Part shown: one piece after another, positions 478 through 50,427 of the stretch
How positions within the stretch are numbered: position 1 is the stretch's first letter
How the letters are laid out: each line of letters begins with the position of its first letter
Assembly: GCA_047495785.1 (NCBI GenBank)
Contig: JBLDXI010000001.1
Coordinates: 1,054,001-1,118,000 of the forward strand
Reading direction: 5' to 3'
DNA from: Lepidodermella squamata
Taxonomy: Eukaryota; Animalia; Gastrotricha
Length of the DNA: 64,000 bases
The notes under the pieces: model-generated
Told to the model about the DNA's origin: nothing
Seen by the model: the letters and a program-made list of their open reading frames with translations, nothing else
The model's database searches: none
Position numbers and translations under genes: made by a program

Positions 478-3400
478 ATGACCTCAGCCCTTACGATTGA
501 CAATCAGAGACGCGCGAATACGTTCTCGATCGCTAACATCCTCGGAATCGATACAACAACTGGCGTCGGATCGTCGGCTGGCAGTGCCGAGATAAACCAC
601 CGAAAACGAAAGATCGCTCCAGCTCATAGCGGCAGCTTCGATGACGACCAGCCGAACGCATTTCGCCGGCGGCACAGCAACGAAAAATCATCACCGGATA
701 GCAACAATCAGAACAGACGGCAGCAATCACTTCATGTCGATATCGAAGGCTCGAATGACGACTTTCCTAATGCAGGTACGTATTAGTTTTACTTCCGATT
801 AAGGTGCTTTGAATCCCTGACTAATGTGAATCATTTTCTCTTCGAGATTTGACCAGAAATTACGGTCCTTATTTTATATATTAGGAGTTCAAATAGGAGT
901 ACTAGTATTCAATTATAGTATTAAATTAGAAGTATCAGTATTAGTAGTTCAATAGAACATTTTGTCAAGGTTCAACTCAAGTTTATTTTGTCTTTTATTA
1001 TTCGGCTCAAATCAATCGACTTTCTGCGTTGATTTGAAATCGCAGCCCTTGTGTCCTGGGTGAAAATTCTAGTTAACCCGGGTGCGTTTCTTTAGACGCA
1101 GTCGGAAGATTGCATTCAAACGTTGATATCTCTCAATCTTCATCGTTTTAAAATTGAAAATTTCACGCCTTTCTATAGAAAAGTTTGCTTCATTTTACCT
1201 GTCAAGTTCGTTTCTTTTCGTTCAATTTTGGTACGCCGACGCATTTTTGCTATTGGCTCTCCCCTATTTTCACAAGGAATATCGATATAAAACCGGACTG
1301 GTTTTAGTCTTAGCTAATTTTAGCGTTAATCTTAATCGTTAGCGGTGGCTATAAGCAAATTTTCGCTTATATTTTTGGCGTGAATATTGCGCGCTTATGT
1401 TGCGCCTGCCTGTCAAATGCGCAGCGCTAGTGCGTCAAAAGGCGCGGCGGTGTGAGGTGCAATAAATTCAATCTAAGAAGCTCAATTATTAAACAATAAC
1501 AGAGACCCCTCGCTCTAGGCATAGGGTGCGATTGACGCAGTTTGCGAGTGATAATAAAACCAAAATTATTATCATATTAACGAGCCACGCGCTTAATCAT
1601 CACGCAGCACCGGTGTCTGCTGCTGCCGCAGTTAATTAATTCGAATATACTCCCTTGAATATTTTATCATTTCGAACGCGCGTTCGCCCGCGCATTTTTT
1701 GCGCCGAGGTGCGCAAAAATTTGGCGCGCGCGCGCGGAAATTGCTGTGCGATATTCGCACTTGGCCAAAGTTGAGCATTTCCGGCTGGCGGCGGCGTGTC
1801 GCGGCGCGCCTCGCTGCCGATCTGGCAATATTTGCTCGGTGTGATGCGGGTGTCGATGAACTCTCATCTCGCCATAATAATGTAATGTGCGATACCTATA
1901 AATAACACACCGGCGGCCGTCGGCTATTTAGAAGTAGCCCGGCGTGTCCATCATCATCGAGGCGCGCTTTTTGTCTCTTCGGCAGAGGAATTTCCCGAGA
2001 CACGGCGGCGCCAAATTTGCCCTTTTATTACAATGTAATTATCGCTATAATATGATAACAAGAGAGAGAGAAGGTAATACACCGAGTTTGCTTTGTAACA
2101 CAGACGGTGTATGGGCTAATAAATATAACTATAACAATAACATGGCCCCGTGTAGAGTGGGTATCACTCGTCATCCATTACCACCCGAGAGATTGGCGTA
2201 TTTGCGCGGCTAATAAGGCCTATCATCGCCGTGCCGTGTCGTTGTCGTTGTCGTCATGCGCAGGTATTTGATAGTCTAGTGCCAACTATTATTATTAATA
2301 TTAGTATTGATGTTGTTGGACAAGAAAGCGCGCGCATCTGATGCCGCCTCTTCGGCAGCTTCTTGACCCGCAATTTGGCCGCGATGCGATGGCCAATCGT
2401 CGCCGTGCTAATATATATATATACCTATTATAATACAACTCGCAACTAATAGCAAATGGCATTCTTCAAGTCGATTCTCAGCACCGGGCTAATGAGCTAT
2501 ATAGGATGGTATAACTAGTAACTAGACAACAAGTGGGCTATTTATCGACGATATGAAGAAAGAAGCAAATAAAAAATGAACCTAAAAAATTCCACCTTAA
2601 TTAATTTTTTAATTTTTTTTCAGAAACGCAACCTTTTATCGGCAATCATCACCATCATCACCCTGCCGCTTACTCACCGTCAGCTAGCGAGTCGGAAATC
2701 GATGTTCTGGTCGACGCCGATGATGAAGACGATAACTGCATGGTCGACGAAGATGGCAACATGTTGGACGATACGGATGACAACGGGCGATGCGCGACCG
2801 CCAACACATCAGGCGCATCGGGCAGTGGTCCGAACCACAAGCGCAAGCCGCGTGTTCTATTCTCGCAGAACCAAGTTTTTGAACTTGAACGCCGATTCAA
2901 GCAACAGAGATACCTATCAGCGCAAGAGCGCGATCAATTGGCGGCGAATCTTAACCTAACCCCGACTCAGGTGAAAATCTGGTTTCAAAACCGGAGGTAC
3001 AAATGCAAACGCCAGACGCAAGATCAGTCGTTCGAGCTGCTGAGAATCAGCCACGAGAAGGCGTTGAGGGACATTTGGCTTCACATGCATGAAACGGCTC
3101 AGATGAACCAAGCTGCGGCAGCTTCGAGTTTCCTGAACCCGGCAGCTTTGAGCATGTTAACTGGAAGTTTCCAAGCCCCTGTTGCGCCGCCCGTTTTGTT
3201 GCCACCCTCGCCGGCGCCGGCGCCAGTAGCCGCGAATCCGTTCGTCAACAACCCGGCTCTACTTGCCCTGCTAACATCGGCCGCGAATGCGAATCGAAAC
3301 CCGACCGCTGATGATTTGATGGCGAAGTTGTTGGCGCAGTTGAACCCCGGCGCCGCAGCGGCTTTCAACCCGCTCGCCGCGATGTTGGGCGCGACGCTGA

Positions 3401-3519
3401 CCCCGGCGTCATCGCTTCAAATCTCGCCGCCATCACCCTCGGCCGCAGCTTCGTCATCATCGCCTAAAGCATCGCCATCGTCATCACAACATCGCGCAAC
3501 CCCAACAACAACGAAATAA
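478..3519 (+). CDS. NK4: NK4/tinman (Nkx2.5-type) homeobox transcription factor; exons 478-775 and 2624-3519
   Basis: Exon 1 carries the TN/eh1 motif FSIANILG. Donor AG|GTACGT at 776 (phase 1) joins TTTTCAG| at 2623 in frame. Homeodomain [59 protein letters not shown] has NK2-class Tyr54 and an Nkx2.5-like QDQSFEL tail. Confidence 0.92.
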
Positions 3520-4343
3520 TTGGGGCGTAAAAAAATTCGCAAAATTGAAGAATAATCAAATCTCACGAGTCGCAATTTTAAAAGTGATCATTTTTGTATA
3601 AAACATATTGAATTTTTTTGTTTCTCTTCGACTTCTCCTCCGCGTAGAACTACACCTGTTTCGGTTTTTTCTCATCCATCCGCCCTGAGAGATATTGACA
3701 ATAATGTGTGCAAAACTCGCAACGCGCAAGTCGCTGTTGTTTTTTGTAAAAAAATAATAACATTTATATTATGACCTAATTATTGCTGAATACGTTTATT
3801 CTTATTATTCGATGGAAATCTCCGCAAGGGTCTCAGAAAAATTGTATATTAATGTGATTGCTGGGCAACCTTTTATTATAACACCTTGAATTTTATCGAT
3901 TAACGATGAGATTAATCGGGCTTATTATCTGATTGACTTTGTAAAAAATTCCTCCTCACCTGGCGAAAACTCGCAACGAATACATACAAGGATGAATGAC
4001 GATATTAATGTTATATATAATGTTATTTAATTTTAAAGGCATAGCAATGATTTTTGTTTCGAGTGTGCAATAAAGACACAGAATGCTAAACAATGTTTCG
4101 GGTTGTTTATAATATAATATAAAAATGATCTCATTTTACAGGTCACTCGAGAGGGTAAATACGGAGCCTGCCAAAGCAGCCAGAAATTACGTCATCTTAT
4201 ACCTTTATTTACCTATTAGCATGCTGAACGCACGAATTATTACCGCGAGGTGTGACTCGGAGTCACGCCTCGATTCCATAAGCAAAAAATGATCTCATAT
4301 ATTACATCATTTCAGCAGGGCTGTAATTCATCATTTATTCGCT

Positions 4344-6702
4344 ATGAGGAACCGCGCGTTTTTGTTCGCTTTTATTTTCGCGACCATCGCTGGGCGATGT
4401 TTGAGCTTAATCAATGTTCAATTGGACGATTTACCTGGCTCTGAGAGTGGGTTCGCGGTAGAAAATGATGATGAAACTGATGACTCATCACGAGAGGACG
4501 ATGACATGGCTGATATCAGTAATGCCACCCTAGCGAACTTAACCTTCGATCACGACCCAGCTTCCATGCCTCCTAAAAGCAAACCTCCACCAACAAGTAA
4601 CAAAAATTGATTATAAACTGAATTTTTTATTCATTATAATTTAGCGAGGTCAAGGTTCAGCCTTACTAGGCTAATGAGGCCAAGCCAGGTGTTCACAGAG
4701 TTGTCGCAAATGGAGGAGGACTTAGTTGAAAGCTCGGCCCTCGACATTGGAGATGGCCGTCGTCTCGTGAGATACGCCCATCGTTTCGCTGGCCTCGACG
4801 TATGGGACTCGTCTACGTCGCTGATGGTCGATAACGTTCATTTCGGCGGGTTCCTGCGCACGGCTGGCAACAACCTGAAGCTACGGCTCAATCTATCGCG
4901 CAAAAATACCGGCCGCATGAACGCGCGAAGTTTGATCATTCCAAAGGACGAAAGTGCTTGTATTAAGCTGGCTCAAAGTCAAACTGGCTTCAAAGTCAAC
5001 GACGTTACGTCGGAGCGATTTATTTACGAGCTGAACTCAACTGTAACTATAGCCGATCTATTCGACCTTCGCGGGCCTGGCTTCGACGCAAATGGGACCC
5101 CGAACCAGTTATATTGCCTCTACGACGCTTTGGGAAGATCTGTCATCAAAACCTGGAAAGGTATCGCCCATTTCTACGGCGATGGTGGTAATGTGAAGAT
5201 CGGGAAATTCCGCTACGGTGTCGACCGGGAGAAGTTACCCGCGACCCAATTACCAAGTGGAAATGGCGGTAAGGTGAGGCAGAACGGGACGTGTCGCATG
5301 ACGACGGCTAACGGCTACGTCACCGTGTGGGACTTGCACCAGTCGACGAATCGTGTGAGACCTGGTTCCGGTTCACCGGTTTCGTACGATTGTAAAAAAG
5401 GCGTTTCGGACTCGATAAACGGCGGTTATGGTCCATCGCACGACTGCTTTTTCTATGCTAGTAAGACTGTTCAGATGCTTATGGACCCTGAATGGGGAGG
5501 TGCGACTCGAATCGAAGAAGTCAGCCCAGTTAAATCGATCACTGTCGGAGTTCATTACGGATCGAAATACGACAATGCGGTCTGATTTGCCACCTTAATT
5601 TTTTATCTGAAAAATCTCATTTTTTATTACAGTTTTGGGACGGCTATGGCCTTCACATGGGGGATGGAAACACCCTTTTCTACTCATCTTGCAGCTGTTA
5701 TGATGGTAAAAAGTTTGCTCTAAACCCAAATCCTCCTTAATTATTAAATTTCAGTAATGGCTCATGAGATTGGTCACGCTGTTACAGCAGCAACGTCACG
5801 ACTGATTTACCAGGGCGATGCAGGGTGTTTAAACGAGGCATTTTCCGATATGACTGGGGAAGCGCTTAAAACTTATTTGAAAATTAAAAACGATTGGAAA
5901 ATCGCGAGCAGCTGCCTAAAAACAGTAATTTGTTGTAAAATCCAGAGATTTTTTCGAACCTTTTGCTGATTTTCAGAGACAATTTTTGAGAAACCTTGCA
6001 GAGCCAATGACTATGGATCAATACAAACCGCCAATGGAGCCGCATTCTTGCAGTCCAATTTTCAACCACGCTTTTTATAAACTTGCAACTTCGAAAGGCT
6101 GGGATGTTAAAAAGGCGTACCGAGCCTTCGCCTTTGCCAACCGAATGTATTGGACGGCTGAGACTAGCATGACATCAGCGGCTTGCGACGTGGTCAACGT
6201 TGTCGATCAGTTGAAGCTAGGCGATCCTCGCGATGTCATAGCCGCGTTTTCAGTTGTGAAAATCAACGTTACCGGGTGCATTGCTAACGCTTCACAGCCG
6301 AACGCTGTGGCTGGTGATAGCGTGGCGGAGTTGAAAAACTGCGAGGCAATCACTTCATTGACAGCGAAAACTGGCGAGGCGATTCATTTCAAGATAAAAC
6401 TCCCGGTTGATGCGACTAAGCAGTACGTTACGGTGAAAGGTACAACTGGCGACGCGGACTTGTACATCAATATTGGCCAAAAAGCAACTGAGGCAAGTTT
6501 AAACGAAAAAATCATGTTGGGAAACAAGAATAAACGTTGTTGCTTTCTATAGACCAAGTGGAGATGGAGGCCATATTGGGATGGCAGCAATGAGTTTGTG
6601 AATGAAGACTTGGAACCTGGCACGGCTGGGATGTACTACTACATTATGCTGATGGCAACGAGTACATTCAGCGATGTTGAACTTTACGCCTGCTACTATT
6701 AA
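4344..6702 (+). CDS. Secreted M4 (thermolysin family, LasB/vibriolysin-like) zinc metalloprotease with propeptide and C-terminal PPC domain; exons 4344-4596, 4645-5579, 5633-5705, 5755-5924, 5977-6492, 6553-6702
   Basis: Signal peptide; FTP-like RYAHRFAGLDVW; WKGIAH/FYGDGGNVKIGKFRYG; YDNAFWDG..GDG..FY; HEIGH zinc motif; NEAFSD third ligand; catalytic His in EPHSCSPIFNHAFYKLA; PPC-like GDADLYI...RPYWDGSNE...YYYIML. All five introns (48-60 nt) preserve frame. Confidence 0.9.
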
Positions 6703-7329
6703 ATTCAAAGAAATCTGTCGATGATTTTAATTTGAAATCCGGTGCTTCCTTCTGATTGCAAAGTTAATTGATAATAAATTATTTAATACAGCTATCAAAT
6801 AGCTATGTCGGCCACAATAGGAAGCATAGTGACGCTAAAATTGGTAAATGGGGACAGTATTTAGGCGAAACCTGAGCCGTTTAGCCACAAAAAATATTAG
6901 TTTCTATGTTATTTTTCCGAGACGCAATTTCGATAGCGTTATTATGAATCCTGGAAAATCCTGGAGAGACACTTGCTCTCCGTTCTCATGCTAAATAATT
7001 TCCAAGCTTTTTCATAATTCTTCACCTTTTTTAAGACCTAAAATCTTTACAACTTCCCTTTCAAAACGTTAGAATCGGAAGTTTTTGTAAACTAAAAGCA
7101 GGTTTAAACCTCGAAGAAGCCGTTGTTTTATTTAAATAAATATTCAGGAATCACGCCGATTTTGCGTGTGCTGGAAACAGTTTGGAATCGGTCTGAAGCA
7201 AAATCGATGCCCAATCGATAACATTATTTGGGACCTCATCTCGGAGGCTGTTTATTGTCTTCGAACACCTCTCACAGTCGGATTTTTATGTTAGGAAATA
7301 TCGTTCAACATATTCATGGGAAAAAAACA

Positions 7330-7401
7330 AGGCCCAGGCGGGAATTGAACCCGCGATCTTCTGTTTACGAGACAGACGCTCTACCACTAAGCTACTGAGC
7401 C
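7330..7401 (-). tRNA. tRNA-Thr(CGT)
   Basis: Reverse complement GGCTCAGTAGCTTAGTGGTAGAGCGTCTGTCTCGTAAACAGAAGATCGCGGGTTCAATTCCCGCCTGGGCCT folds as a cloverleaf with anticodon CGT and T-loop GTTCAA. A T7 Pol III terminator follows (7321-7327). Confidence 0.95.
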
Positions 7402-9890
7402 TGATACGGTATCACAATATTTCAAAAAATTGTAAAATTAGCTGGAACCAAATTCTGGATCCCTGCGTCCTGGCAAATTCGAACAGTCATTGGATATGTT
7501 TCGTCTATTTTTAGATCGTGGATAATCTTGATGCATGAAGGCCTGGCATCATTCGATATCATCGAGCAACAGCCGTTTACCTAGTTATTTTTAGATCGAT
7601 TAAGCGTTATTTAACACGCTAATGCAGCCCGCCTACCCATGCCGGTATTTAAACGTCCGTGAAGCGTTCCGCTAGACCGCACACGGCTCTAGCGATTTAG
7701 CGCGCAAAATTTTTCGATGTATCCTACAGCGATGTCTTCTGTTTGATCGACGCGCAAATGAAGGCGCGCGAGCTCGTGATAACGCGCAGTGCGCACAAAT
7801 GTTTACGCGTGTGGCGCGCGCGCGCTAATATAGCAGCGGGCGCATCGCGCGTACGTAATACTAACCCACATTAAGGAGGAGGCGCTGCGATATATATATA
7901 TTTTGAAGAGCGCAAATCGGCGCAAATGTGGCCGTGCAGCAATCGAGATGCGGTTACATGCTATATCCATCTTCGCGCGATTTTCTGTAACGGCCTACTC
8001 AGTGTTAAACTATGCCAACCTCACTCGCATCCTATGTAATACCAGGTTGCCGCGTGTAACCATTTGGAGTAGTAGTAATAACGCCACTAATATCGGCCAA
8101 ATAGCGCGGTATTTCCCCAGAATGGACAACATCGTATCTGTGCAATGTTCAGTGTACCAACTTCTATGCGCTGTGTAAATTTTTCACTTGTTTGCGTATT
8201 TTCCCACCTTTCAGACTTGGGAGGCGTCTAGGACTAATAACCCATACATTTTTTCATCGCGAGTCTCGCATTTAAATGGTTTCAATAGACATTCGCTAAT
8301 TTTAATGCTATCTGTTCAATGATGGCCGTCTATTTACGTAACCACGTCTTTCATCTGGATCAGTTTTCTGCAGGTCCAAAATACACCTTCAAGGTAATAA
8401 AATGCTTTTCACTTGAGAAAATTGCAAAACACAAAATGTGTTAGGCTAAATTTACCTATGGGTTTTCCGTGATTTTTTTCGCTCAATATTATTCTTTGAT
8501 CTTTCAATTTTCTCGCCAATATTAAAGGAATGGTTCTTATTTTCTCAGCAGACGATTAACGATAACGTCATTTGTTGACTATATTCATGCTGAGCGCTAG
8601 TTCAAAATAATGTTTCTTAAATTTGTTAGAATCGATCATTTCCTGTTCATTCGATGTCCAATGACCATCGGTAATTTTATTGGCGTCTGAAGCGTATAAC
8701 CCTACATAACAAGACATCATGATTCGAAAATAGCGTACTTTTATAGGCGAATTTCGTCTATAACCGGCTATAGTTATGATGTATCGGGAATGTAATAAAT
8801 CGGCGTGAAATGCATCGCGCGCGATAAATTTTAAAATAGCCGAACAATGCTGGTAGTGTAGTGGTGGGAGAGCGGTAGTGGATTAGCCGCGCGCGCTTCC
8901 CGCCAGGCGCGTCTGGCTTTGACAGCCGCGCGACAGTTGTGGCTAGTCAGTCAGTATTAGTTTTTTCTCTCCCAGCGATAAATAACGATAAAGACATGGG
9001 ACATTCGATGCGCATTTACTCGCTCAGCATCGTCATCGATGAATCGCGTCCATTTATACGCGCTATGCTATCGCTTAATAAAATGACAGCGGTTGGTAAA
9101 AATACTACCACTACTACTAGTAGTAGCTGTTATAATAATAATAATAGCAGTAATAATGCAGAGCAAGCGCGTTTTGTTGTTTCTTTTGCTCACATAGATA
9201 GCGCGAGTACCAGTAGCAGCAGCAGCAGGCCGCGTTTTTGCTCAGCGTAGCGCGAAAGCCGAATATATAAGCGAATGCGCGTGCGCGCTATTCGATCGGT
9301 TTTCGCGCGCGCGCACAAATAATGCGCGCCGATGATGATATATCACATGCGCACAAAAATAGTTAATAATAATAATAATGGCTAAGAGAACGCTGAAAAA
9401 CGCACGCTACTTTTTCTTATTATTTTACTATACGTAGCCAGGCTATACAGTCATCGCAAATGTACTATCATTATTACTACGATTCTGGAGGAGCCTCTCG
9501 GCTGCTGTTGCTCGCGCCCTAAAAATTGGTCGATATTTTGACGGCACCAAACAAAATAATAATAATGACAAGGGCTGTGCGTTATCCGCTGTCCATTAGG
9601 TTGACCTGCTTCGAATATTTATCGAAATACGCTTCTATATATAAATTCATTGCGGCGCCGATGGAAATTTCGCCCGGCAGCGCTGTATATAAACTATATC
9701 AAATTATTACTACCATTATTCATACTAAACATAAATATAATATAAATTGACGGGCATTTTTGTAGGGACCGTCGTTGTTTCATTATTAGAAAAACCGCTA
9801 GAAACAAACAAAAACGCACCAAAGTGCGCAGAATTATCTGTTGTTATATTCCGGATTGACCTAAAAAAATCTCCGCTTTTCATCTTCTAG

Positions 9891-41823: not shown

Positions 41824-43837
41824 TTATTTTTGCTTGGAATCTCTGTTTGATACCACAGCGGCTGTAAGTTTTGGCCAGTAATCACTCCAGAACTGAATTT
41901 CAAAGTGAATAGAGGCTTCAATAAAAAAGGTGTAGAAATTAAATTACTTTACACTGCCGAAGCTTCAATTCGCAGATGAAATCGTCTTTTTCGTAGTGGA
42001 CTATCGTCGAGTTGCTGAGCTCGAAATACCGATGGGAGCATTCATCACCGGTGAAAGTTGGCCATTCTCGCAGCTTACTGCAAGAGTTTGATGAGAAGGC
42101 GCTATTGTTGCCATTGGGATTCCTTATAAGCCCATTTTAAAGTTAATAGATTAGGGCTAACAGTCATTCGAAGTAAAATACCCTGTTGTCACGAAATTGG
42201 ACCAATATTGAAGCAGCTTCTTCGAAAACGTCTTTTCATCCTCGGCGTAACCGTATTCTGCTGCATACGGAGCCATTTGCTCGCCCCAGAGAAAGCTCAA
42301 CTCGTCACCATGAAGAACGCCCATCCATTCGGGTACCAAACCCTGTTGAAAACAGAATATTTCCTAGCCATTCAAAAATTGAGATGATACGAACCAAGGA
42401 AGGTCTGTGAGTGAAATGATAAGCATAAACGGGGACTTTGTGGCTAGCAACGATTTTAGCCCATTCGAACGTAGGACAAGAAAAGGCGTAGTCACCAACA
42501 GCCTGGACGGCCGCATCAATGATTTCACTCCCCTGAGGAATGCCATTGCTTCTCGGCCAATAATGAAGCTTCATAGCTTGAAGCTGGAGAGGGTCCAGTT
42601 GAGGATCAGGTGAACCTGCGAGAATTCGATAACCAACTGTCAAAAGGTCTTCGTAATGTGTTAAATTCAGATTATCCACCGAAGTAACGTTATCTTGAGG
42701 CGAGAATGGCAGTAAAGCTTCAGCAACTGGGCTTTGCAGGAAGAACCAAGACCCTTCATCTCTATCATCACCAATTATTATTGGGACCTTTGCGAAGTCC
42801 CCGGCTAGTAGCATATCACGAGGATTCCTCGGCACGAAATCGCCATCGACAAATGGCCCACTGCCAAAACCGGTTCCTTGCGAAAGCGGGTACAAATCAG
42901 CCCGAGCAATGTCCATAGCATCAACTGATCGGAAGCACGAAATCATCTCTGTAACATTTTGCGACGTTGAATTCCCACATTTTGGCGATATTGATCTATA
43001 AGCTTGATCCATAATGAGTTTTACCGTTCTATTTGAGTACTGGGCCCATTCAGCTAAAGCACTCCCTGACTGTAAAATCGCCCTGTGGAATAAATTTCGG
43101 CTGTAGGGTGACAAAATTAGGTAGGAAACTGTGACAGAACCAGCACTTTCCCCGCCAATAGTAACACGGCTTTTATCACCACCGAAACTGCCGATGTTGC
43201 TTTGAATCCATCTTAAAGCTTCAGTAGCATCCCAAAATCCCGCATTAGCAACGGCGCCTTGGTCATTTTTGCCGAAATACGAGAAACCAAGAGTTCCTAT
43301 GCGGTAGTTCAATGTGACTACTACGACATTTCCATGCCCACTGAAAATAGTGCCGTTATAGGTGTAAGTCATGCTGGTGCCAGAAACGAAGCCATTTCCG
43401 AAAATGAATGTGTATACTGGGATGGGTTTATCTGCCTCGCCCTTAATCACAGCGTCTAGAGTTGCTTTCGGCACCCAAATGTTTAGCTGAAGACAATCTT
43501 CACCGATAGTTGAATTAGCTGGAATGGTATCTCTGACGAAATTCATGAAGATATTTCCGCCAAGGACTTGAGTACACGTCGTTGCAGGTTTTGTCGCGTC
43601 CAAAACTGAAGTCCATGGCCGTTTCGGGACTGGCTTAGCAAATCGAAGTTTCCCAATGGGTGCCTCGGCGAAAGGGATTCCCGTGAACTCGTAAACATCT
43701 TGCTTATTAGTCGCGACTTGAATCAGCCGACCACGAATAGGCCCAACTGTAGAATTAACTACAACAGTCGGTGGAATTTGAGCAGTCCCAGCGTGTATAA
43801 AAATTGATAAGATAACAAAAAAATGAATTAAAGACAT
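41824..43837 (-). CDS. Secreted type-B carboxylesterase, cholinesterase-like, copy 1; exons 43837-42395, 42342-42182, 42122-41948, 41892-41824
   Basis: Signal peptide; FTGIPFAEAPIGKLRF; EDCLQLNIW; GESAG nucleophile; DEGSWF; WMGVLHGDEL; ends FWSDYWPKL... Confidence 0.92.
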
Positions 43838-48419: not shown

Positions 48420-50427
48420 TCAATTAAACTCTGAGTTCCTCGATACCACAGCAGCTTCTAGTTTTGGCCAGTAATCACTCCAGAACTGAATAAAGGAAGA
48501 AAATTTGAAATCAAATAAAAGCTAAAGAAAATTAACTTTACTTGACACTGCCGAAGCTTTAATTCGCATATGAAATCGTCTTTTTCGTAGTGGACTATCG
48601 TCGAGTTGCTGAGCTCGAAATACCGATGGGAGCATTCATCACCTGTGAAAGTCGGCCAGTCTCGCAGCTCATCGCAAGCTTGAGCTGAGCAGGAATCTTT
48701 ACTACCATTGGGGTCTCTTTTCATTCCATTTTAGCGTTAAAATGAATAAATCTAATGAGTGTGTAAAATACCCGGTTGTCACGAAATTGGACCAGTATTG
48801 AAGCAGCTTCTTCGAAAAGGTCTTTTCATCCTCGGCATAGCCGAATTCTGCAGCGTACGGCGCCATTTGCTCGCCGAAGAGGAAGCTCAACTCGTCACCA
48901 TGCAGAACGCCCATCCATTCAGGTACAAAACCCTGTTGAAAATTGAATAGCTCATGGAGATTATTAAATATACAATCCGATGATACGAACCAAAGATGGT
49001 CTGTGAGTGAAATGATATGCATAAACAGGGACTTTGTGGCTAGCCACGATTTTCGCCCATTCGAACGTAGGACAAGAGAAGGCGTAATCACCAGCAGCCT
49101 GGACGACCGCATCAATAATTTCACGTCCCTGAGGAATGCCATTACTTCTCGGCCAGTAATGAAGCTTCATAGCTTGAAGCTGGAGAGGGTCCAGTTGAGG
49201 ATCTGGCGAGCCCATCAGAAGTCGATATCCAATTCTCAAAAGATCTTCGTAATGAGTCAAGTTCAGATTATCCACTGAATGAACATTGTCTTGGGGCGTA
49301 AAAGGCAGCAAAGTCTCGGCGATAGGGCTTTGTATGAAGAACCAAGACCCTTCGTCTTTATTATCGCCGATTATTATCGGAATTTTTGCGAAATCCCCGG
49401 CTAGCAACATATCACGAGGATTCCTCGGCACGAAATCGCCATCAACAATTGGCCCACTGCCAACACCGGTTCCTTGCGAGGATGGATACAAATCTGCCTG
49501 TGCAATGTCCATAGCATCAACAGATCTTAAGCACAAAATGATATCGGAAGCGTTTTGCGATGTTTGATTGCCACACTTCGGCGAAATAAATCGATAAATT
49601 TGATCCATTATGAGTTTATTCGTTCTAGCTGAATGCTGAGCCCACTCTGCGAAAGCAGTGCCGGATTGTATTATCGCGCGGTGGAATAAATTTCTACTGT
49701 GGGGTGATATAAGCAGGTAGGAAACAGTAGCAGCCCCGGCGCTTTCTCCACCGACAGTTACATGGTCCTTATCCCCGCCAAAACTAACGATGTTGCTTTG
49801 AATCCATCTTAAAGCTTCAGTAGCATCCCATAGCCCGGCATTGGCTACAGCGCCGAGGTCATTCGGGCCGAAATACGAGAAGCCGAGAGTTCCGACTCGG
49901 TAATTAAATGTGACAACTACGACATTGCCAAGTCCGCTGAAAATTGTTCCATTGTAGGTGTAAGTCATACTGGAACCAGAAATAAACCCGCCGCCGTAGA
50001 TGAAAGTGTAAACTGGAATGTTCTTCAGGGCTACTCGGCCTTCAATCACGCCATCCAACGTATTTTTCGGTACCCAAATGTTTATCTGAAGGCAGTCTTC
50101 GCCGACTGCTGAATCTACAGGGATGGTATCTCGCGTAAAGTTCAATAAAAGACTTCCGCCAAAGAATTGAGTGCACGTGGTTGCTGGTTTTGTTGCGTCC
50201 AAAACTGATGTCCATGGTTGTTTTGGGACTGGTTTTGCAAATCGAAGTTTCCCAATGGGTGCCTCGGCGAAAGGGATTCCCGTAAACTCATAGACAGGTT
50301 GTTCAGCTTGAATTAACCGACCTCGAATAGGTCCAGCTTTAGTATTTACTACGACGGTCTGCGGATTTTGAGAAGTCACAAGATTCAAGTAGATTGATAG
50401 GATAAGACTAATCCCCAGCAAAGCCAT
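48420..50427 (-). CDS. Secreted type-B carboxylesterase, cholinesterase-like, copy 2 (4 exons)
   Basis: YGGGF oxyanion loop; GESAG; DEGSWF; WMGVLHGDEL; same intron positions as copy 1. Confidence 0.92.

What the first reader, a model, noticed from the sequence alone, without database searches (positions are those of the whole stretch)
4344..6702. Bacterial-type LasB/vibriolysin M4 protease with a PPC domain and five spliceosomal introns (horizontal-transfer candidate)
Seen: the architecture signal-propeptide-M4-PPC is split by five short introns and sits between an animal homeobox gene and a tRNA/nAChR gene, so contamination is unlikely. Known: this architecture and the segments WKGIAH/xxGxGGNxKIGKxxYG, NGGYGPxxD, NEAFSDMxGE and GWDxKKAxxxFxxANRxYWT are typical of gammaproteobacterial secreted elastases; M4 is not a standard animal family. 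Zinc ligands and the catalytic Glu, His and Tyr are retained. Inference: an old, domesticated bacterial gene used for digestion or matrix degradation.
Basis: partly seen in the sequence, partly recalled or inferred. Interest (0 to 1): 0.8.

Follow-up and report, generated by a model that had tools for sequence, protein, structure and literature searches.

The report
Bacterial-type M4 protease gene in animal
A small invertebrate carries an intact, spliced and expressed gene for a secreted zinc protease of the bacterial elastase/vibriolysin kind, almost certainly of bacterial ancestry, in a gene family otherwise found among animals only in molluscs.

Summary
Window 4344-6702 (+) is a six-exon gene for a 698-residue protein: signal peptide, propeptide, M4 catalytic domain, PPC domain. 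RNA-type contigs from two studies remove all five short introns exactly; four are GT-AG and one is GC-AG.

All catalytic residues are kept, and the best solved matches are LasB and vibriolysin MCP-02. Listed coding polymorphisms are 23 synonymous against 6 non-synonymous, and listed indels lie only in introns or the 3' end. A diverged relative on metagenome contigs has the orthologue in the same place, between the homeobox and nAChR genes.

An exhaustive HMMER search found the nearest kin only on eukaryote-like contigs of that same metagenome project (at least six genes, with 0 to 5 introns). Next come a mollusc-wide family, then bacteria. The best bacterial hit beats the best mollusc hit (alien index about 60).

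Bacterial origin is well supported. Whether this lineage and molluscs share one ancient acquisition is unresolved (AU p 0.40-0.46). Function is inferred, not shown, and I did not identify the host species.

The scan's first readers noted paralogues on two other pieces of this genome; I could not check them.

The parts
4344..4596 (+). Exon 1: start codon, signal peptide (MRNRAFLFAFIFATIAG...) and an acidic N-terminal stretch that the syntenic orthologue lacks
   Evidence: N-terminal 12-aa hydropathy 2.5. The exon 1/2 junction is spliced in X2. Alignment to the orthologue.
4597..4644 (+). Intron 1, 48 nt, GT-AG, phase 1, 15% GC; absent from the L001 orthologue
   Evidence: (joint 4596>4645)
4645..5579 (+). 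Exon 2: propeptide with an FTP-like motif, then the N-terminal lobe of the catalytic domain. By homology the mature enzyme starts near residue 260 (WKGIAH|FYGDGGN). Holds Cys301 and Cys334, which correspond to the LasB Cys30-Cys58 pair.
   Evidence: PDB pro-elastase 1.8e-08, MCP-02 8.8e-07, with piece residues 176-311 aligned to mature residues 3-114. Also.
5580..5632 (+). Intron 2, 53 nt, GT-AG, phase 0, between YDNA and FWDG. It is the only intron shared with the syntenic orthologue, where it is 59 nt (L001 9752-9810).
5633..5705 (+). Exon 3 (FWDGYGLHMGDGNTLFYSSCSCYD); holds the clade-specific Cys418
5706..5754 (+). Intron 3, 49 nt, GT-AG, phase 1; absent from the orthologue and from all paralogues examined
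5755..5924 (+). Exon 4, the active-site helices. HEIGH (His424 at 5763-5765, Glu425, His428), Tyr439, the third zinc ligand Glu448 in NEAFSD, Asp452, and the clade-specific Cys445 and Cys474.
   Evidence: Pfam Peptidase_M4_C 32 bits. PDB alignment to residues 139-191 of 7ecc, MCP-02 and LasB. Also.
5925..5976 (+). Intron 4, 52 nt, GT-AG, phase 0; found in the window lineage only
5977..6492 (+). Exon 5: catalytic His500 (LasB His223), the C-terminal helical lobe, Cys547 and Cys578 (the LasB Cys270-Cys297 pair), a linker, and the first half of the PPC domain
   Evidence: Pfam Peptidase_M4_C 31.5 bits. PDB pro-elastase 4e-15. Also.
6493..6552 (+). Intron 5, 60 nt, GC-AG (GCAAGT donor), phase 0, inside the PPC domain; found in the window lineage only
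   Evidence: X3 joint 6490>6551 with 2 ambiguous letters, which equals 6492>6553, plus X2 loose ends that read the neighbouring exon; the PPC profile match runs across the junction.
6553..6702 (+). Exon 6: second half of the PPC domain and the stop codon
   Evidence: the profile of bacterial PPC tails matches residues 601-696 at 53 bits, against 8.8 for the best of 200 shuffles.
6703..6790 (+). 3' untranslated end with AATAAA at 6773-6778. RNA contigs stop at about 6771; the exact poly(A) site is not mapped.
2740..3519 (+). Upstream neighbour: last exon of an NK4/tinman-like homeobox gene (host gene and synteny anchor)
   Evidence: 84% identical to the L001 counterpart. X1 record 1 joins 3050-4522 in one DNA contig.
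7329..7402 (-). tRNA-Thr(CGU) between the protease and receptor genes; not found in the syntenic locus L001
9993..13659 (+). Downstream neighbour: nicotinic acetylcholine receptor alpha-subunit gene (YPCC loop C). Its exons are 85-100% identical to those of L001.

Best explanation
This is a functional nuclear gene of an animal. It encodes a secreted zinc endopeptidase of family M4, in the pseudolysin/vibriolysin branch, and its ancestor came from a bacterium by horizontal transfer.

Shown:
- The gene is transcribed from both alleles and all five introns are spliced out.
- It sits between host genes, in synteny that is conserved in a diverged relative.
- It is under purifying selection.
- It keeps every catalytic residue, both LasB-type cysteine pairs and the full bacterial domain order.

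Inferred:
- The N-terminal hydrophobic segment sends the protein into the secretory pathway.
- The roughly 240-residue propeptide (FTP-like motif) acts as a folding helper and inhibitor. It is cut off near residue 260, as in LasB and MCP-02.
- The mature enzyme uses His424, His428 and Glu448 to hold zinc, Glu425 as the base, and Tyr439 and His500 to stabilise the transition state.
- The C-terminal PPC beta-sandwich helps bind substrates or is trimmed off.

After acquisition the family gained eukaryotic signal peptides, four invariant extra cysteines (probably two new disulfides) and introns. It duplicated into at least six genes in the relative. The physiological role, extracellular digestion or defence, is a guess.
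For: Gene model.

Splicing and expression:
- X2 and X3 contigs from two studies skip all five introns. The DNA run X1 keeps them and shows two alleles at similar depth.
- X2 carries both allelic variants.

Selection:
- Of 29 listed coding differences, 23 are synonymous.
- All listed indels lie in introns or the 3' end.

Family membership:
- Pfam Peptidase_M4_C is above threshold on exons 4 and 5.
- PDB best hits are LasB/pro-elastase, PlM4P and MCP-02, ahead of thermolysin.
- Residues equivalent to LasB H140, E141, H144, Y155, E164, D168 and H223 are invariant in all 7 clade members.
- An AlphaFold model of the orthologue's C-terminal 300 aa has pLDDT 92.7. It superposes on MCP-02 and LasB at 1.6-2.0 A, and its tail matches a PPC domain.
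- The PPC profile hits the window protein at 53 bits.

Residence in the host genome:
- The orthologue P0001 on L001/L002 lies between a homeodomain gene and a receptor gene, collinear with the window.

Bacterial ancestry:
- The exhaustive HMMER search gave only 130 hits. The nearest are eukaryote-like contigs of one metagenome project, then molluscs, then bacteria.
- The best bacterial full-length hit, P0099, is in a typical bacterial gene context and has the same FTP-M4-M4_C-PPC order. It scores 252 bits (E 8e-76), against 179 bits (E 2.6e-50) for the best mollusc.
- Paralogues have 0 introns (P0006, P0008), 1 (L001) or differently placed introns (L003). Only intron 2 is shared, and only with the orthologue.
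Against: - No enzymatic, proteomic or tissue data exist, so activity and role are inferred.
- Asp221 (LasB numbering), which orients the catalytic His, is Glu here and varies across the clade. Calcium ligand Glu175 is Lys.
- The exon 2 piece alone gets no Pfam hit at E<0.01.
- No specific donor can be named. The clade sits on a long stem in an unresolved backbone.
- A sister relation to the mollusc family is not rejected, so the transfer may be far older than this lineage.
- X2 and X3 are not on record as RNA. I call them RNA-type because they lack the introns.
- I did not identify the host species. 'Probably a rotifer' comes from other agents' unchecked notes.
Confidence: 0.85

Rival explanations
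1. There was one ancient acquisition, shared with molluscs. A bacterial M4 gene entered a common ancestor of molluscs and this animal's lineage, was inherited vertically and was lost in most descendants. The window gene is then a member of an old animal M4 family, not a lineage-specific transfer.
For: - In the 64-row careful tree the two animal clades are sisters, at 50/80 support.
- A constrained search beat the quick free tree by 43 lnL.
- Moving the window clade next to the molluscs costs only 1.7-2.1 lnL, with p-AU 0.40-0.46.
- The mollusc family is itself old: cephalopods branch basal to bivalves within it.
Against: - The free 112-row quick tree and both free 89-row trees (quick and careful) keep the clades apart. 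Only 2% of bootstrap trees in the 89-row careful tree join them.
- Two long branches may attract each other.
- There are no shared derived characters. The signature cysteines differ (418/445/474/502 against a different pair in molluscs) and no indel is shared.
- The scallop gene's single intron is in the signal peptide, and none of the window's intron positions is shared.
- The best bacterial hit outscores the best mollusc hit.
- This reading needs many losses, since no named hit comes from any other animal phylum.
Confidence: 0.3
2. M4 is an ancestral eukaryotic or metazoan gene, inherited vertically and lost almost everywhere. No transfer from bacteria took place.
For: Two animal groups have intron-bearing M4 genes, and their monophyly is not rejected.
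Against: - The exhaustive search found no named hit from any other animal phylum.
- Both clades sit among proteobacterial sequences and keep the complete bacterial FTP-M4-PPC layout.
- Family members are intronless or intron-poor, and intron positions are not shared.
Confidence: 0.06
3. The gene is bacterial contamination or a misassembly, and does not lie in the animal genome.
For: Only the bacterial-type sequence and domain order.
Against: - Five spliceosomal introns are removed in RNA-type contigs.
- An independent DNA contig joins the homeobox 3' region to exon 1 (X1 record 1, 3050-4522). Another runs from exon 5 past 7320.
- There are two alleles at host-like depth.
- The same gene order occurs in a second species.
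Confidence: 0.01
4. The gene is expressed, but the protein is a catalytically weak or dead protease that has been turned to a binding or regulatory role.
For: Asp221 is replaced and variable across the clade. Calcium ligand Glu175 is Lys. Four new cysteines lie near the active site.
Against: - All zinc ligands, the general base Glu, and Tyr155 and His223 are invariant in seven diverged members.
- Lys at position 175 also occurs in 11% of the bacterial homologues.
- Purifying selection acts on the gene.
Confidence: 0.07

Closest known systems
Pseudolysin (LasB elastase, Pseudomonas aeruginosa; PDB 1ezm, 8cr4) and vibriolysin MCP-02 (PDB 3nqx)
   Same: - The same fold and catalytic machinery: HEXXH, the Glu of NEAFSD, Tyr155 and His223.
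- Both cysteine pairs are kept.
- The propeptide-then-catalytic order is the same, and like many vibriolysins the protein has a C-terminal PPC domain.
- These are the best PDB matches by sequence and, for the orthologue model, by structure.
   Different: - Identity is only about 30-37%.
- The gene is nuclear and animal, with five introns and a eukaryotic signal peptide.
- There are four extra invariant cysteines, at LasB positions 134, 161, 190 and 225.
- Asp221 is Glu and Glu175 is Lys.
- There is an insertion after the GGNxKxG motif and a 7-residue deletion before His223.
- No PepSY domain was detected.
Mollusc 'elastase-like' / 'virulence metalloprotease-like' genes (e.g. Ylistrum balloti XP_060074769, Ostrea edulis XP_048756120, Octopus vulgaris 'M4 family metallopeptidase')
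   Same: These are animal nuclear genes for vibriolysin-type M4 proteases with a C-terminal beta domain. They are probably of bacterial origin, and a sister relation to the window clade is not rejected.
   Different: - Identity to the window protein is 25-29%, below the best bacterial hits.
- They carry a different signature cysteine pair.
- The scallop gene has one intron, in the signal peptide.
- Their neighbours are cathepsin L genes.
- I found no paper describing them.
Expressed, intron-bearing genes of bacterial origin in microscopic invertebrates (e.g. bdelloid rotifers; PMC3499245, PMC4632278, PMC11258130, seen as titles and abstracts only)
   Same: The same kind of event: a bacterial enzyme gene resident in an animal genome, with introns gained, a eukaryotic secretion signal and expression.
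   Different: - In my paper searches no listed paper on animal gene transfer held 'thermolysin' or 'Peptidase_M4'.
- No named rotifer protein appears among the hits.
- The host here was not identified by me.

Membership tests
Peptidase family M4 (thermolysin family; Pfam PF01447 + PF02868) | HEXXH zinc motif plus a third zinc ligand Glu about 20 residues downstream in NExxSD (Glu-zincin) | tested here: met
   HEIGH at residues 424-428 and NEAFSD with Glu448. These align to LasB H140, E141, H144 and E164 and are invariant in the clade.
Peptidase family M4 (thermolysin family; Pfam PF01447 + PF02868) | Transition-state residues Tyr157 and His231 (thermolysin numbering; Tyr155 and His223 in LasB) | tested here: met
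   Tyr439 and His500 align to LasB Tyr155 and His223
Peptidase family M4 (thermolysin family; Pfam PF01447 + PF02868) | Pfam models above the gathering score | tested here: met
   - PF02868 scores 32.2 and 31.5 bits on the exon 4 and exon 5 pieces (cut-off 24.4).
- PF01447 is not hit on the exon 2 piece at E<0.01.
- PF01447 is hit on the orthologue's second exon at 24.8 bits (cut-off 22.4) and is on record for paralogues P0002-P0008.
Peptidase family M4 (thermolysin family; Pfam PF01447 + PF02868) | Thermolysin-like fold | tested here: met
pLDDT 92.7, and Foldseek gives rmsd 1.6-2.0 A over 187 columns to MCP-02, PlM4P and LasB.
Peptidase family M4 (thermolysin family; Pfam PF01447 + PF02868) | Zinc-dependent endopeptidase activity inhibited by phosphoramidon | not testable with these tools
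   Needs the protein
Pseudolysin/vibriolysin branch of M4 | Closer to LasB and vibriolysins than to thermolysin, bacillolysin or aureolysin | tested here: met
   For the orthologue's C-terminal half the PDB ranking is LasB 3e-31, MCP-02 2e-27, ProA 9e-21, bacillolysin 3e-15, thermolysin 5e-12. The window pieces give the same order.
Pseudolysin/vibriolysin branch of M4 | Two disulfides, Cys30-Cys58 and Cys270-Cys297 | tested here: met
   Cysteines are present at the aligned columns (window C301, C334, C547, C578), as in 78-99% of bacterial homologues. Pairing itself was not tested.
Pseudolysin/vibriolysin branch of M4 | Asp221 partner of the catalytic His, and calcium ligands Asp136, Glu172, Glu175, Asp183 | tested here: not met
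   Asp136, Glu172 and Asp183 are kept. Glu175 is Lys. Asp221 is Glu in the window and varies across the clade (E, Q, D, A, Q, S, S). Residue numbering partly rests on my memory of LasB.
PPC domain (bacterial pre-peptidase C-terminal domain, PF04151) | C-terminal beta-sandwich that matches PPC profiles | tested here: met
   - A local profile built from 24 bacterial M4 tails hits window residues 601-696 at 53 bits, against 8.8 for the best of 200 shuffles.
- The orthologue scores 24.8 bits on PF04151, just under the 25.9 cut-off.
- Its model matches PPC structure 5sv5 with TM 0.71.
- The window's Pfam pieces gave no hit because intron 5 splits the domain.
FTP propeptide motif (PF07504) | Pfam FTP match in the propeptide | tested here: inconclusive
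   The orthologue scores 14.8 bits, E 0.025, below the 21 cut-off. The window exon 2 piece gives no hit at E<0.01. The motif region aligns between the two proteins.
Horizontally acquired bacterial gene resident in an animal genome | Physical linkage to host genes, spliceosomal introns and expression | tested here: met
Horizontally acquired bacterial gene resident in an animal genome | Outside its own clade the gene scores better against bacteria than against animals, and it is absent from most animals | tested here: met
   - Best bacterial hit E 8e-76, best mollusc hit E 2.6e-50. The difference in ln E is about 60.
- No named hit comes from any other animal phylum in the exhaustive or word-based searches.
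Horizontally acquired bacterial gene resident in an animal genome | An acquisition independent of other animal lineages, or a named donor | tested here: inconclusive
   The backbone is unresolved. The regraft AU test gives p 0.40-0.46 for sisterhood with molluscs.

The most novel reading that the evidence does not exclude
The window gene and the mollusc-wide 'elastase-like' genes descend from a single bacterial M4 gene captured before molluscs and this animal's lineage split. That would make it a very old domesticated bacterial protease family in animals, kept in a few lineages and lost in the rest.

Within this family, the window gene gained four of its five introns after splitting from a still-syntenic orthologue. 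This would give a dated series of intron gains, from 0 through 1 to 5.
Probability: 0.3. Interest if true: 0.65.

Novelty: new member of a known kind. Interest (0 to 1): 0.5.

Why it matters
M4 proteases are textbook bacterial secreted enzymes and virulence factors, and animals are generally said to lack them.

- This locus shows a fully domesticated animal copy: secretion signal, introns, expression from both alleles, purifying selection and family expansion.
- The work also turned up a mollusc-wide family that seems undescribed in the literature I could search.
- Members of the family with 0, 1, two or more, and 5 introns, one of them in conserved synteny with the window gene, form a clean natural series. 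It can be used to study how transferred genes gain introns and adapt to the eukaryotic secretory pathway, for instance through new cysteine pairs.

If the host is a rotifer, as other agents suggest, gene transfer as such is no surprise. The interest then lies in the enzyme family and in the possible link to molluscs.

Tried and rejected
- Pfam on the exon 2, 1, 3 and 6 pieces gave nothing. This was resolved with PDB searches, the orthologue's uninterrupted exon and a local profile.
- The word-based search with exon 2 found only P0001, so I ran the exhaustive search.
- Identifying the host failed. The carboxylesterase ORF gave no close named relative: at most 37% identity, spread over ticks, nematodes and molluscs. 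Sample accession numbers are in no paper.
- Paper searches for M4 or thermolysin transfer into animals, rotifers or bivalves returned nothing relevant.
- treekit's AU test on the careful 89-row tree did not finish.
- My first manual AU test compared the careful free tree with a constrained tree from a fast search. It is confounded and should be ignored. I replaced it with a minimal regraft test.
- The introns are not copies of one another or of other window sequence, so nothing suggests introner-type elements.
- The cys-loop receptor fused to M4 in a Saccostrea gene model looked at first like shared synteny with the window. I rejected it as evidence: the gene order differs, the receptor is divergent by eye, and from my own knowledge such receptors are very numerous in bivalves.
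As a precaution I laid reads only on 3050-7320, leaving out the homeodomain and the tRNA.
Full report
**Observation**

The region 4344-6702 (+) assembles into a six-exon open reading frame of 2097 nt, 698 aa. The exons are 4344-4596, 4645-5579, 5633-5705, 5755-5924, 5977-6492 and 6553-6702. The five introns are 48-60 nt long and AT-rich (15-32% GC, against 49% in the CDS). Four are GT-AG and the fifth is GC-AG with the donor GCAAGT. No other copy of the gene lies in the window.

**The gene lies in an animal genome**

- Upstream is an NK4/tinman-like homeobox ORF at 2740-3519 (Pfam Homeodomain, E 3e-21).
- Downstream are tRNA-Thr(CGU) at 7329-7402 (-) and a multi-exon nicotinic receptor alpha-subunit gene with the YPCC loop.
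- The DNA run X1 gives one contig covering 3050-4522, from the homeobox 3' region into exon 1. Another contig runs from 6475 past 7320.
- X1 also shows two alleles at similar depth. For example, two contigs over 5546-5831 differ at 22 letters plus 2 gaps.

**Expression and splicing**

Contigs of X2 (2015, 'organism B') and X3 (2014, 'organism A') lack the introns precisely.
- Joints occur at 4596>4645, 5578>5632 (cut +1), 5704>5754 (cut +1) and 5924>5977.
- The joint 6490>6551 has two ambiguous letters. That equals 6492>6553, the GC-AG reading.
- X2 loose ends at 6492 and 6551 read the neighbouring exon.
- Neither run is on record as RNA. I infer RNA from the missing introns.
- X2 carries both allelic variants at 4523-4564 and 6240-6294, so both alleles are expressed.

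**Selection**

Of the 29 coding differences listed, 23 are synonymous third-position changes and 6 are non-synonymous, the latter falling in 4 codons. A further 48 differences were not shown in that table. Every listed indel lies in an intron or after the stop codon.

**What the protein is**

- Pfam Peptidase_M4_C is above threshold on the exon 4 and exon 5 pieces.
- The PDB sequence searches rank LasB/pro-elastase, PlM4P and vibriolysin MCP-02 first. Then come Legionella ProA, bacillolysin, thermolysin and aureolysin.
- By these alignments His424, Glu425, His428, Tyr439, Glu448, Asp452 and His500 correspond to LasB H140, E141, H144, Y155, E164, D168 and H223. All are invariant in the seven members of the gene's own clade.
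- Cysteines stand at both LasB disulfide positions.
- Two residues depart from LasB. Asp221 is Glu here and variable in the clade. Calcium ligand Glu175 is Lys, as in 11% of the bacterial homologues.
- Four cysteines, at LasB positions 134, 161, 190 and 225, are present across the clade with a single exception, in a truncated gene call. They are absent from at least 99% of the other homologues, most of them bacterial, and from molluscs. They probably form two new disulfides.
- The N-terminus is a hydrophobic signal-like segment, as in the orthologue and paralogues.
- The propeptide carries a weak FTP-like motif. In the orthologue it scores E 0.025, below the Pfam threshold.
- Residues 601-696 match a profile built from 24 bacterial M4 PPC tails at 53 bits, against 8.8 for the best of 200 shuffles. 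The match runs across the intron 5 junction.
- An AlphaFold model of the orthologue's uninterrupted second exon (300 aa) has pLDDT 92.7. It superposes on MCP-02 and LasB at 1.6-2.0 A, and its tail matches a PPC domain (5sv5, TM 0.71).

**Relatives**

The exhaustive HMMER search of 1.84 billion representatives with the exon 2 piece found only 130 proteins at E<=0.001. The top hits are listed below.

| Protein | Identity to the exon 2 piece | Locus | Notes |
|---|---|---|---|
| P0001 | 43% | L001/L002 | syntenic orthologue |
| P0002 | 35% | L003/L004 | paralogue, differently placed introns |
| P0003, P0004 | 30%, 34% | L005 | tandem pair |
| P0006 | 35% | L007/L008 | intronless, 675 aa |
| P0008 | 31% | L009 | intronless, 673 aa |

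- All of these lie on eukaryote-like contigs from one metagenome project. Their neighbours include homeodomain, HMG-box, ankyrin-kinase and sulfotransferase genes.
- L001 is collinear with the window from the homeobox gene through the protease and the receptor to a LicD gene. Identity there is about 84-90% in the homeobox exon, 85-100% in the receptor exons and 39-47% in LicD.
- The protease itself is about 42% identical over its whole length by my count from the alignment, and 55% in the catalytic domain. L001 is therefore a true orthologue in a well-diverged species.
- The orthologue shares only intron 2, at YDNA|FWDG, phase 0. It is uninterrupted at the positions of introns 1, 3, 4 and 5.
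- P0002 and P0003 are uninterrupted across the positions of introns 2-4. L003 has introns at other places.
- On parsimony, introns 3 and 4, and probably 1 and 5, were gained in the window's lineage. Intron 2 was gained in the common ancestor of the window gene and L001.

**Other animals**

- Named hits in a second clade are all molluscs: Ylistrum, Pecten, Mizuhopecten, Argopecten, Pinctada, Ostrea, two Saccostrea species, Mytilus, Octopus vulgaris and Argonauta hians.
- The scallop gene lies on a 939-kb contig between cathepsin L genes. It has a single intron, in its signal peptide.
- In the 89-row trees this clade has 99-100 support, and cephalopods branch basal to bivalves. That points to old vertical descent within molluscs.

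**Bacteria**

Named bacterial hits are Proteobacteria. They include Pseudoalteromonas, Rheinheimera, Zooshikella, Shewanella and Veronia. Nearest to the mollusc query are Rhodanobacter, Lysobacter, Thermomonas, Collimonas and Chitinimonas.

P0099 is the best full-length bacterial match to the window protein: 252 bits, E 8e-76, aligned over window residues 88-697. It sits in a typical bacterial gene context and has the FTP-M4-M4_C-PPC order. The best mollusc hit scores 179 bits, E 2.6e-50. The difference in ln E is about 60.

**One transfer or two**

- The window clade has 100/100 support in every tree.
- Its relation to the mollusc clade is not resolved.
  - The two are weak sisters (50/80) in the 64-row careful tree.
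  - They are apart in the 112-row and 89-row trees. Only 2% of bootstrap trees in the 89-row careful tree join them.
  - A constrained search beat the quick free tree by 43 lnL.
- The fairest test moved only the window clade, placing it next to the molluscs in the careful tree.
  - This cost 1.7 lnL under LG+C20+F+G4 (p-AU 0.40, from only 1000 resamples) and 2.1 under LG+F+G4 (p-AU 0.46).
  - The reverse move, molluscs to the window clade's position, is rejected at p 0.02-0.03.
- I found no shared derived character (cysteines, indels or introns) that links the two animal clades.
- I therefore rate separate acquisitions as somewhat more likely than a single one, but the question stays open.

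**Mechanism**

Transcription, splicing, conservation of the catalytic and structural residues, and purifying selection are shown. Secretion, propeptide-assisted folding with autoprocessing near residue 260, zinc catalysis, and a substrate-binding or trimmed PPC domain are inferred by homology with LasB, MCP-02 and other vibriolysins. The physiological role, digestive or defensive extracellular proteolysis, is a guess. The expansion of the family to at least six genes in the relative is compatible with that guess but does not prove it.

**Host**

I did not identify the species. The homeobox and nicotinic receptor genes show it is an animal. Notes by other agents on this genome call it 'probably a rotifer' and report spliced-leader genes; I did not check these. 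No named rotifer protein appears among the M4 hits. First-reader notes s1-430973 and s1-394104 report further M4 paralogues on other pieces of this genome, and I could not reach that DNA.

**Verdict**

The horizontal-transfer reading is well supported, with the caveat about molluscs. The gene is a new member of a known kind of event and a known enzyme family, and is of moderate interest.

Noticed in passing
window 14447-60822, mostly minus strand: A long tandem array of single-ORF genes lies here. Eight of the nine non-esterase ORFs I scanned (290-448 aa) hit the LicD family (phosphocholine/ribitol-phosphate transferase type). Two carboxylesterase genes (42305-43837 and 48964-50427) are interspersed. 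The syntenic locus L001 has only one LicD gene at this place.
   Followed up: partly
L006 (Ylistrum balloti), L010, L013 (Saccostrea echinata); proteins P0278-P0294: A mollusc-wide family of vibriolysin-type M4 genes covers scallops, pearl oyster, oysters, mussel, octopus and argonaut. NCBI annotates them as 'elastase-like' or 'virulence metalloprotease-like'. The scallop gene has one intron, in the signal peptide, and two of the loci (L006 and L010) have cathepsin L-type neighbours. I found no paper on this family.
   Followed up: partly
L013 10001-15263 (Saccostrea echinata, protein P0285): The NCBI gene model fuses a cys-loop receptor (Neur_chan_LBD + Neur_chan_memb) to the M4 protease, so a receptor gene lies directly upstream of M4 on the same strand. 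This is reminiscent of the M4-nAChR neighbourhood in the window. The order differs and the receptor is divergent, so it is probably coincidence.
   Followed up: partly
L005 1044-4463; L007 10001-12028; L009 2866-4887; L003 10001-12140: The metagenome relative has at least five further M4 paralogues: a tandem pair, two intronless genes of 673-675 aa, and one with introns at positions different from the window's. P0006 and P0008 carry still more cysteines around the active site.
   Followed up: partly
window 7329-7402 (-) versus L001: tRNA-Thr(CGU) sits between the protease and receptor genes in the window. ARAGORN finds no tRNA anywhere in the syntenic locus L001.
   Followed up: partly
window 4480-6800 in run X1: Two alleles at about equal depth differ by up to about 8% over short stretches (22 letters and 2 gaps in 286 nt at 5546-5831). 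This is a very heterozygous or haplotype-collapsed region.
   Followed up: no
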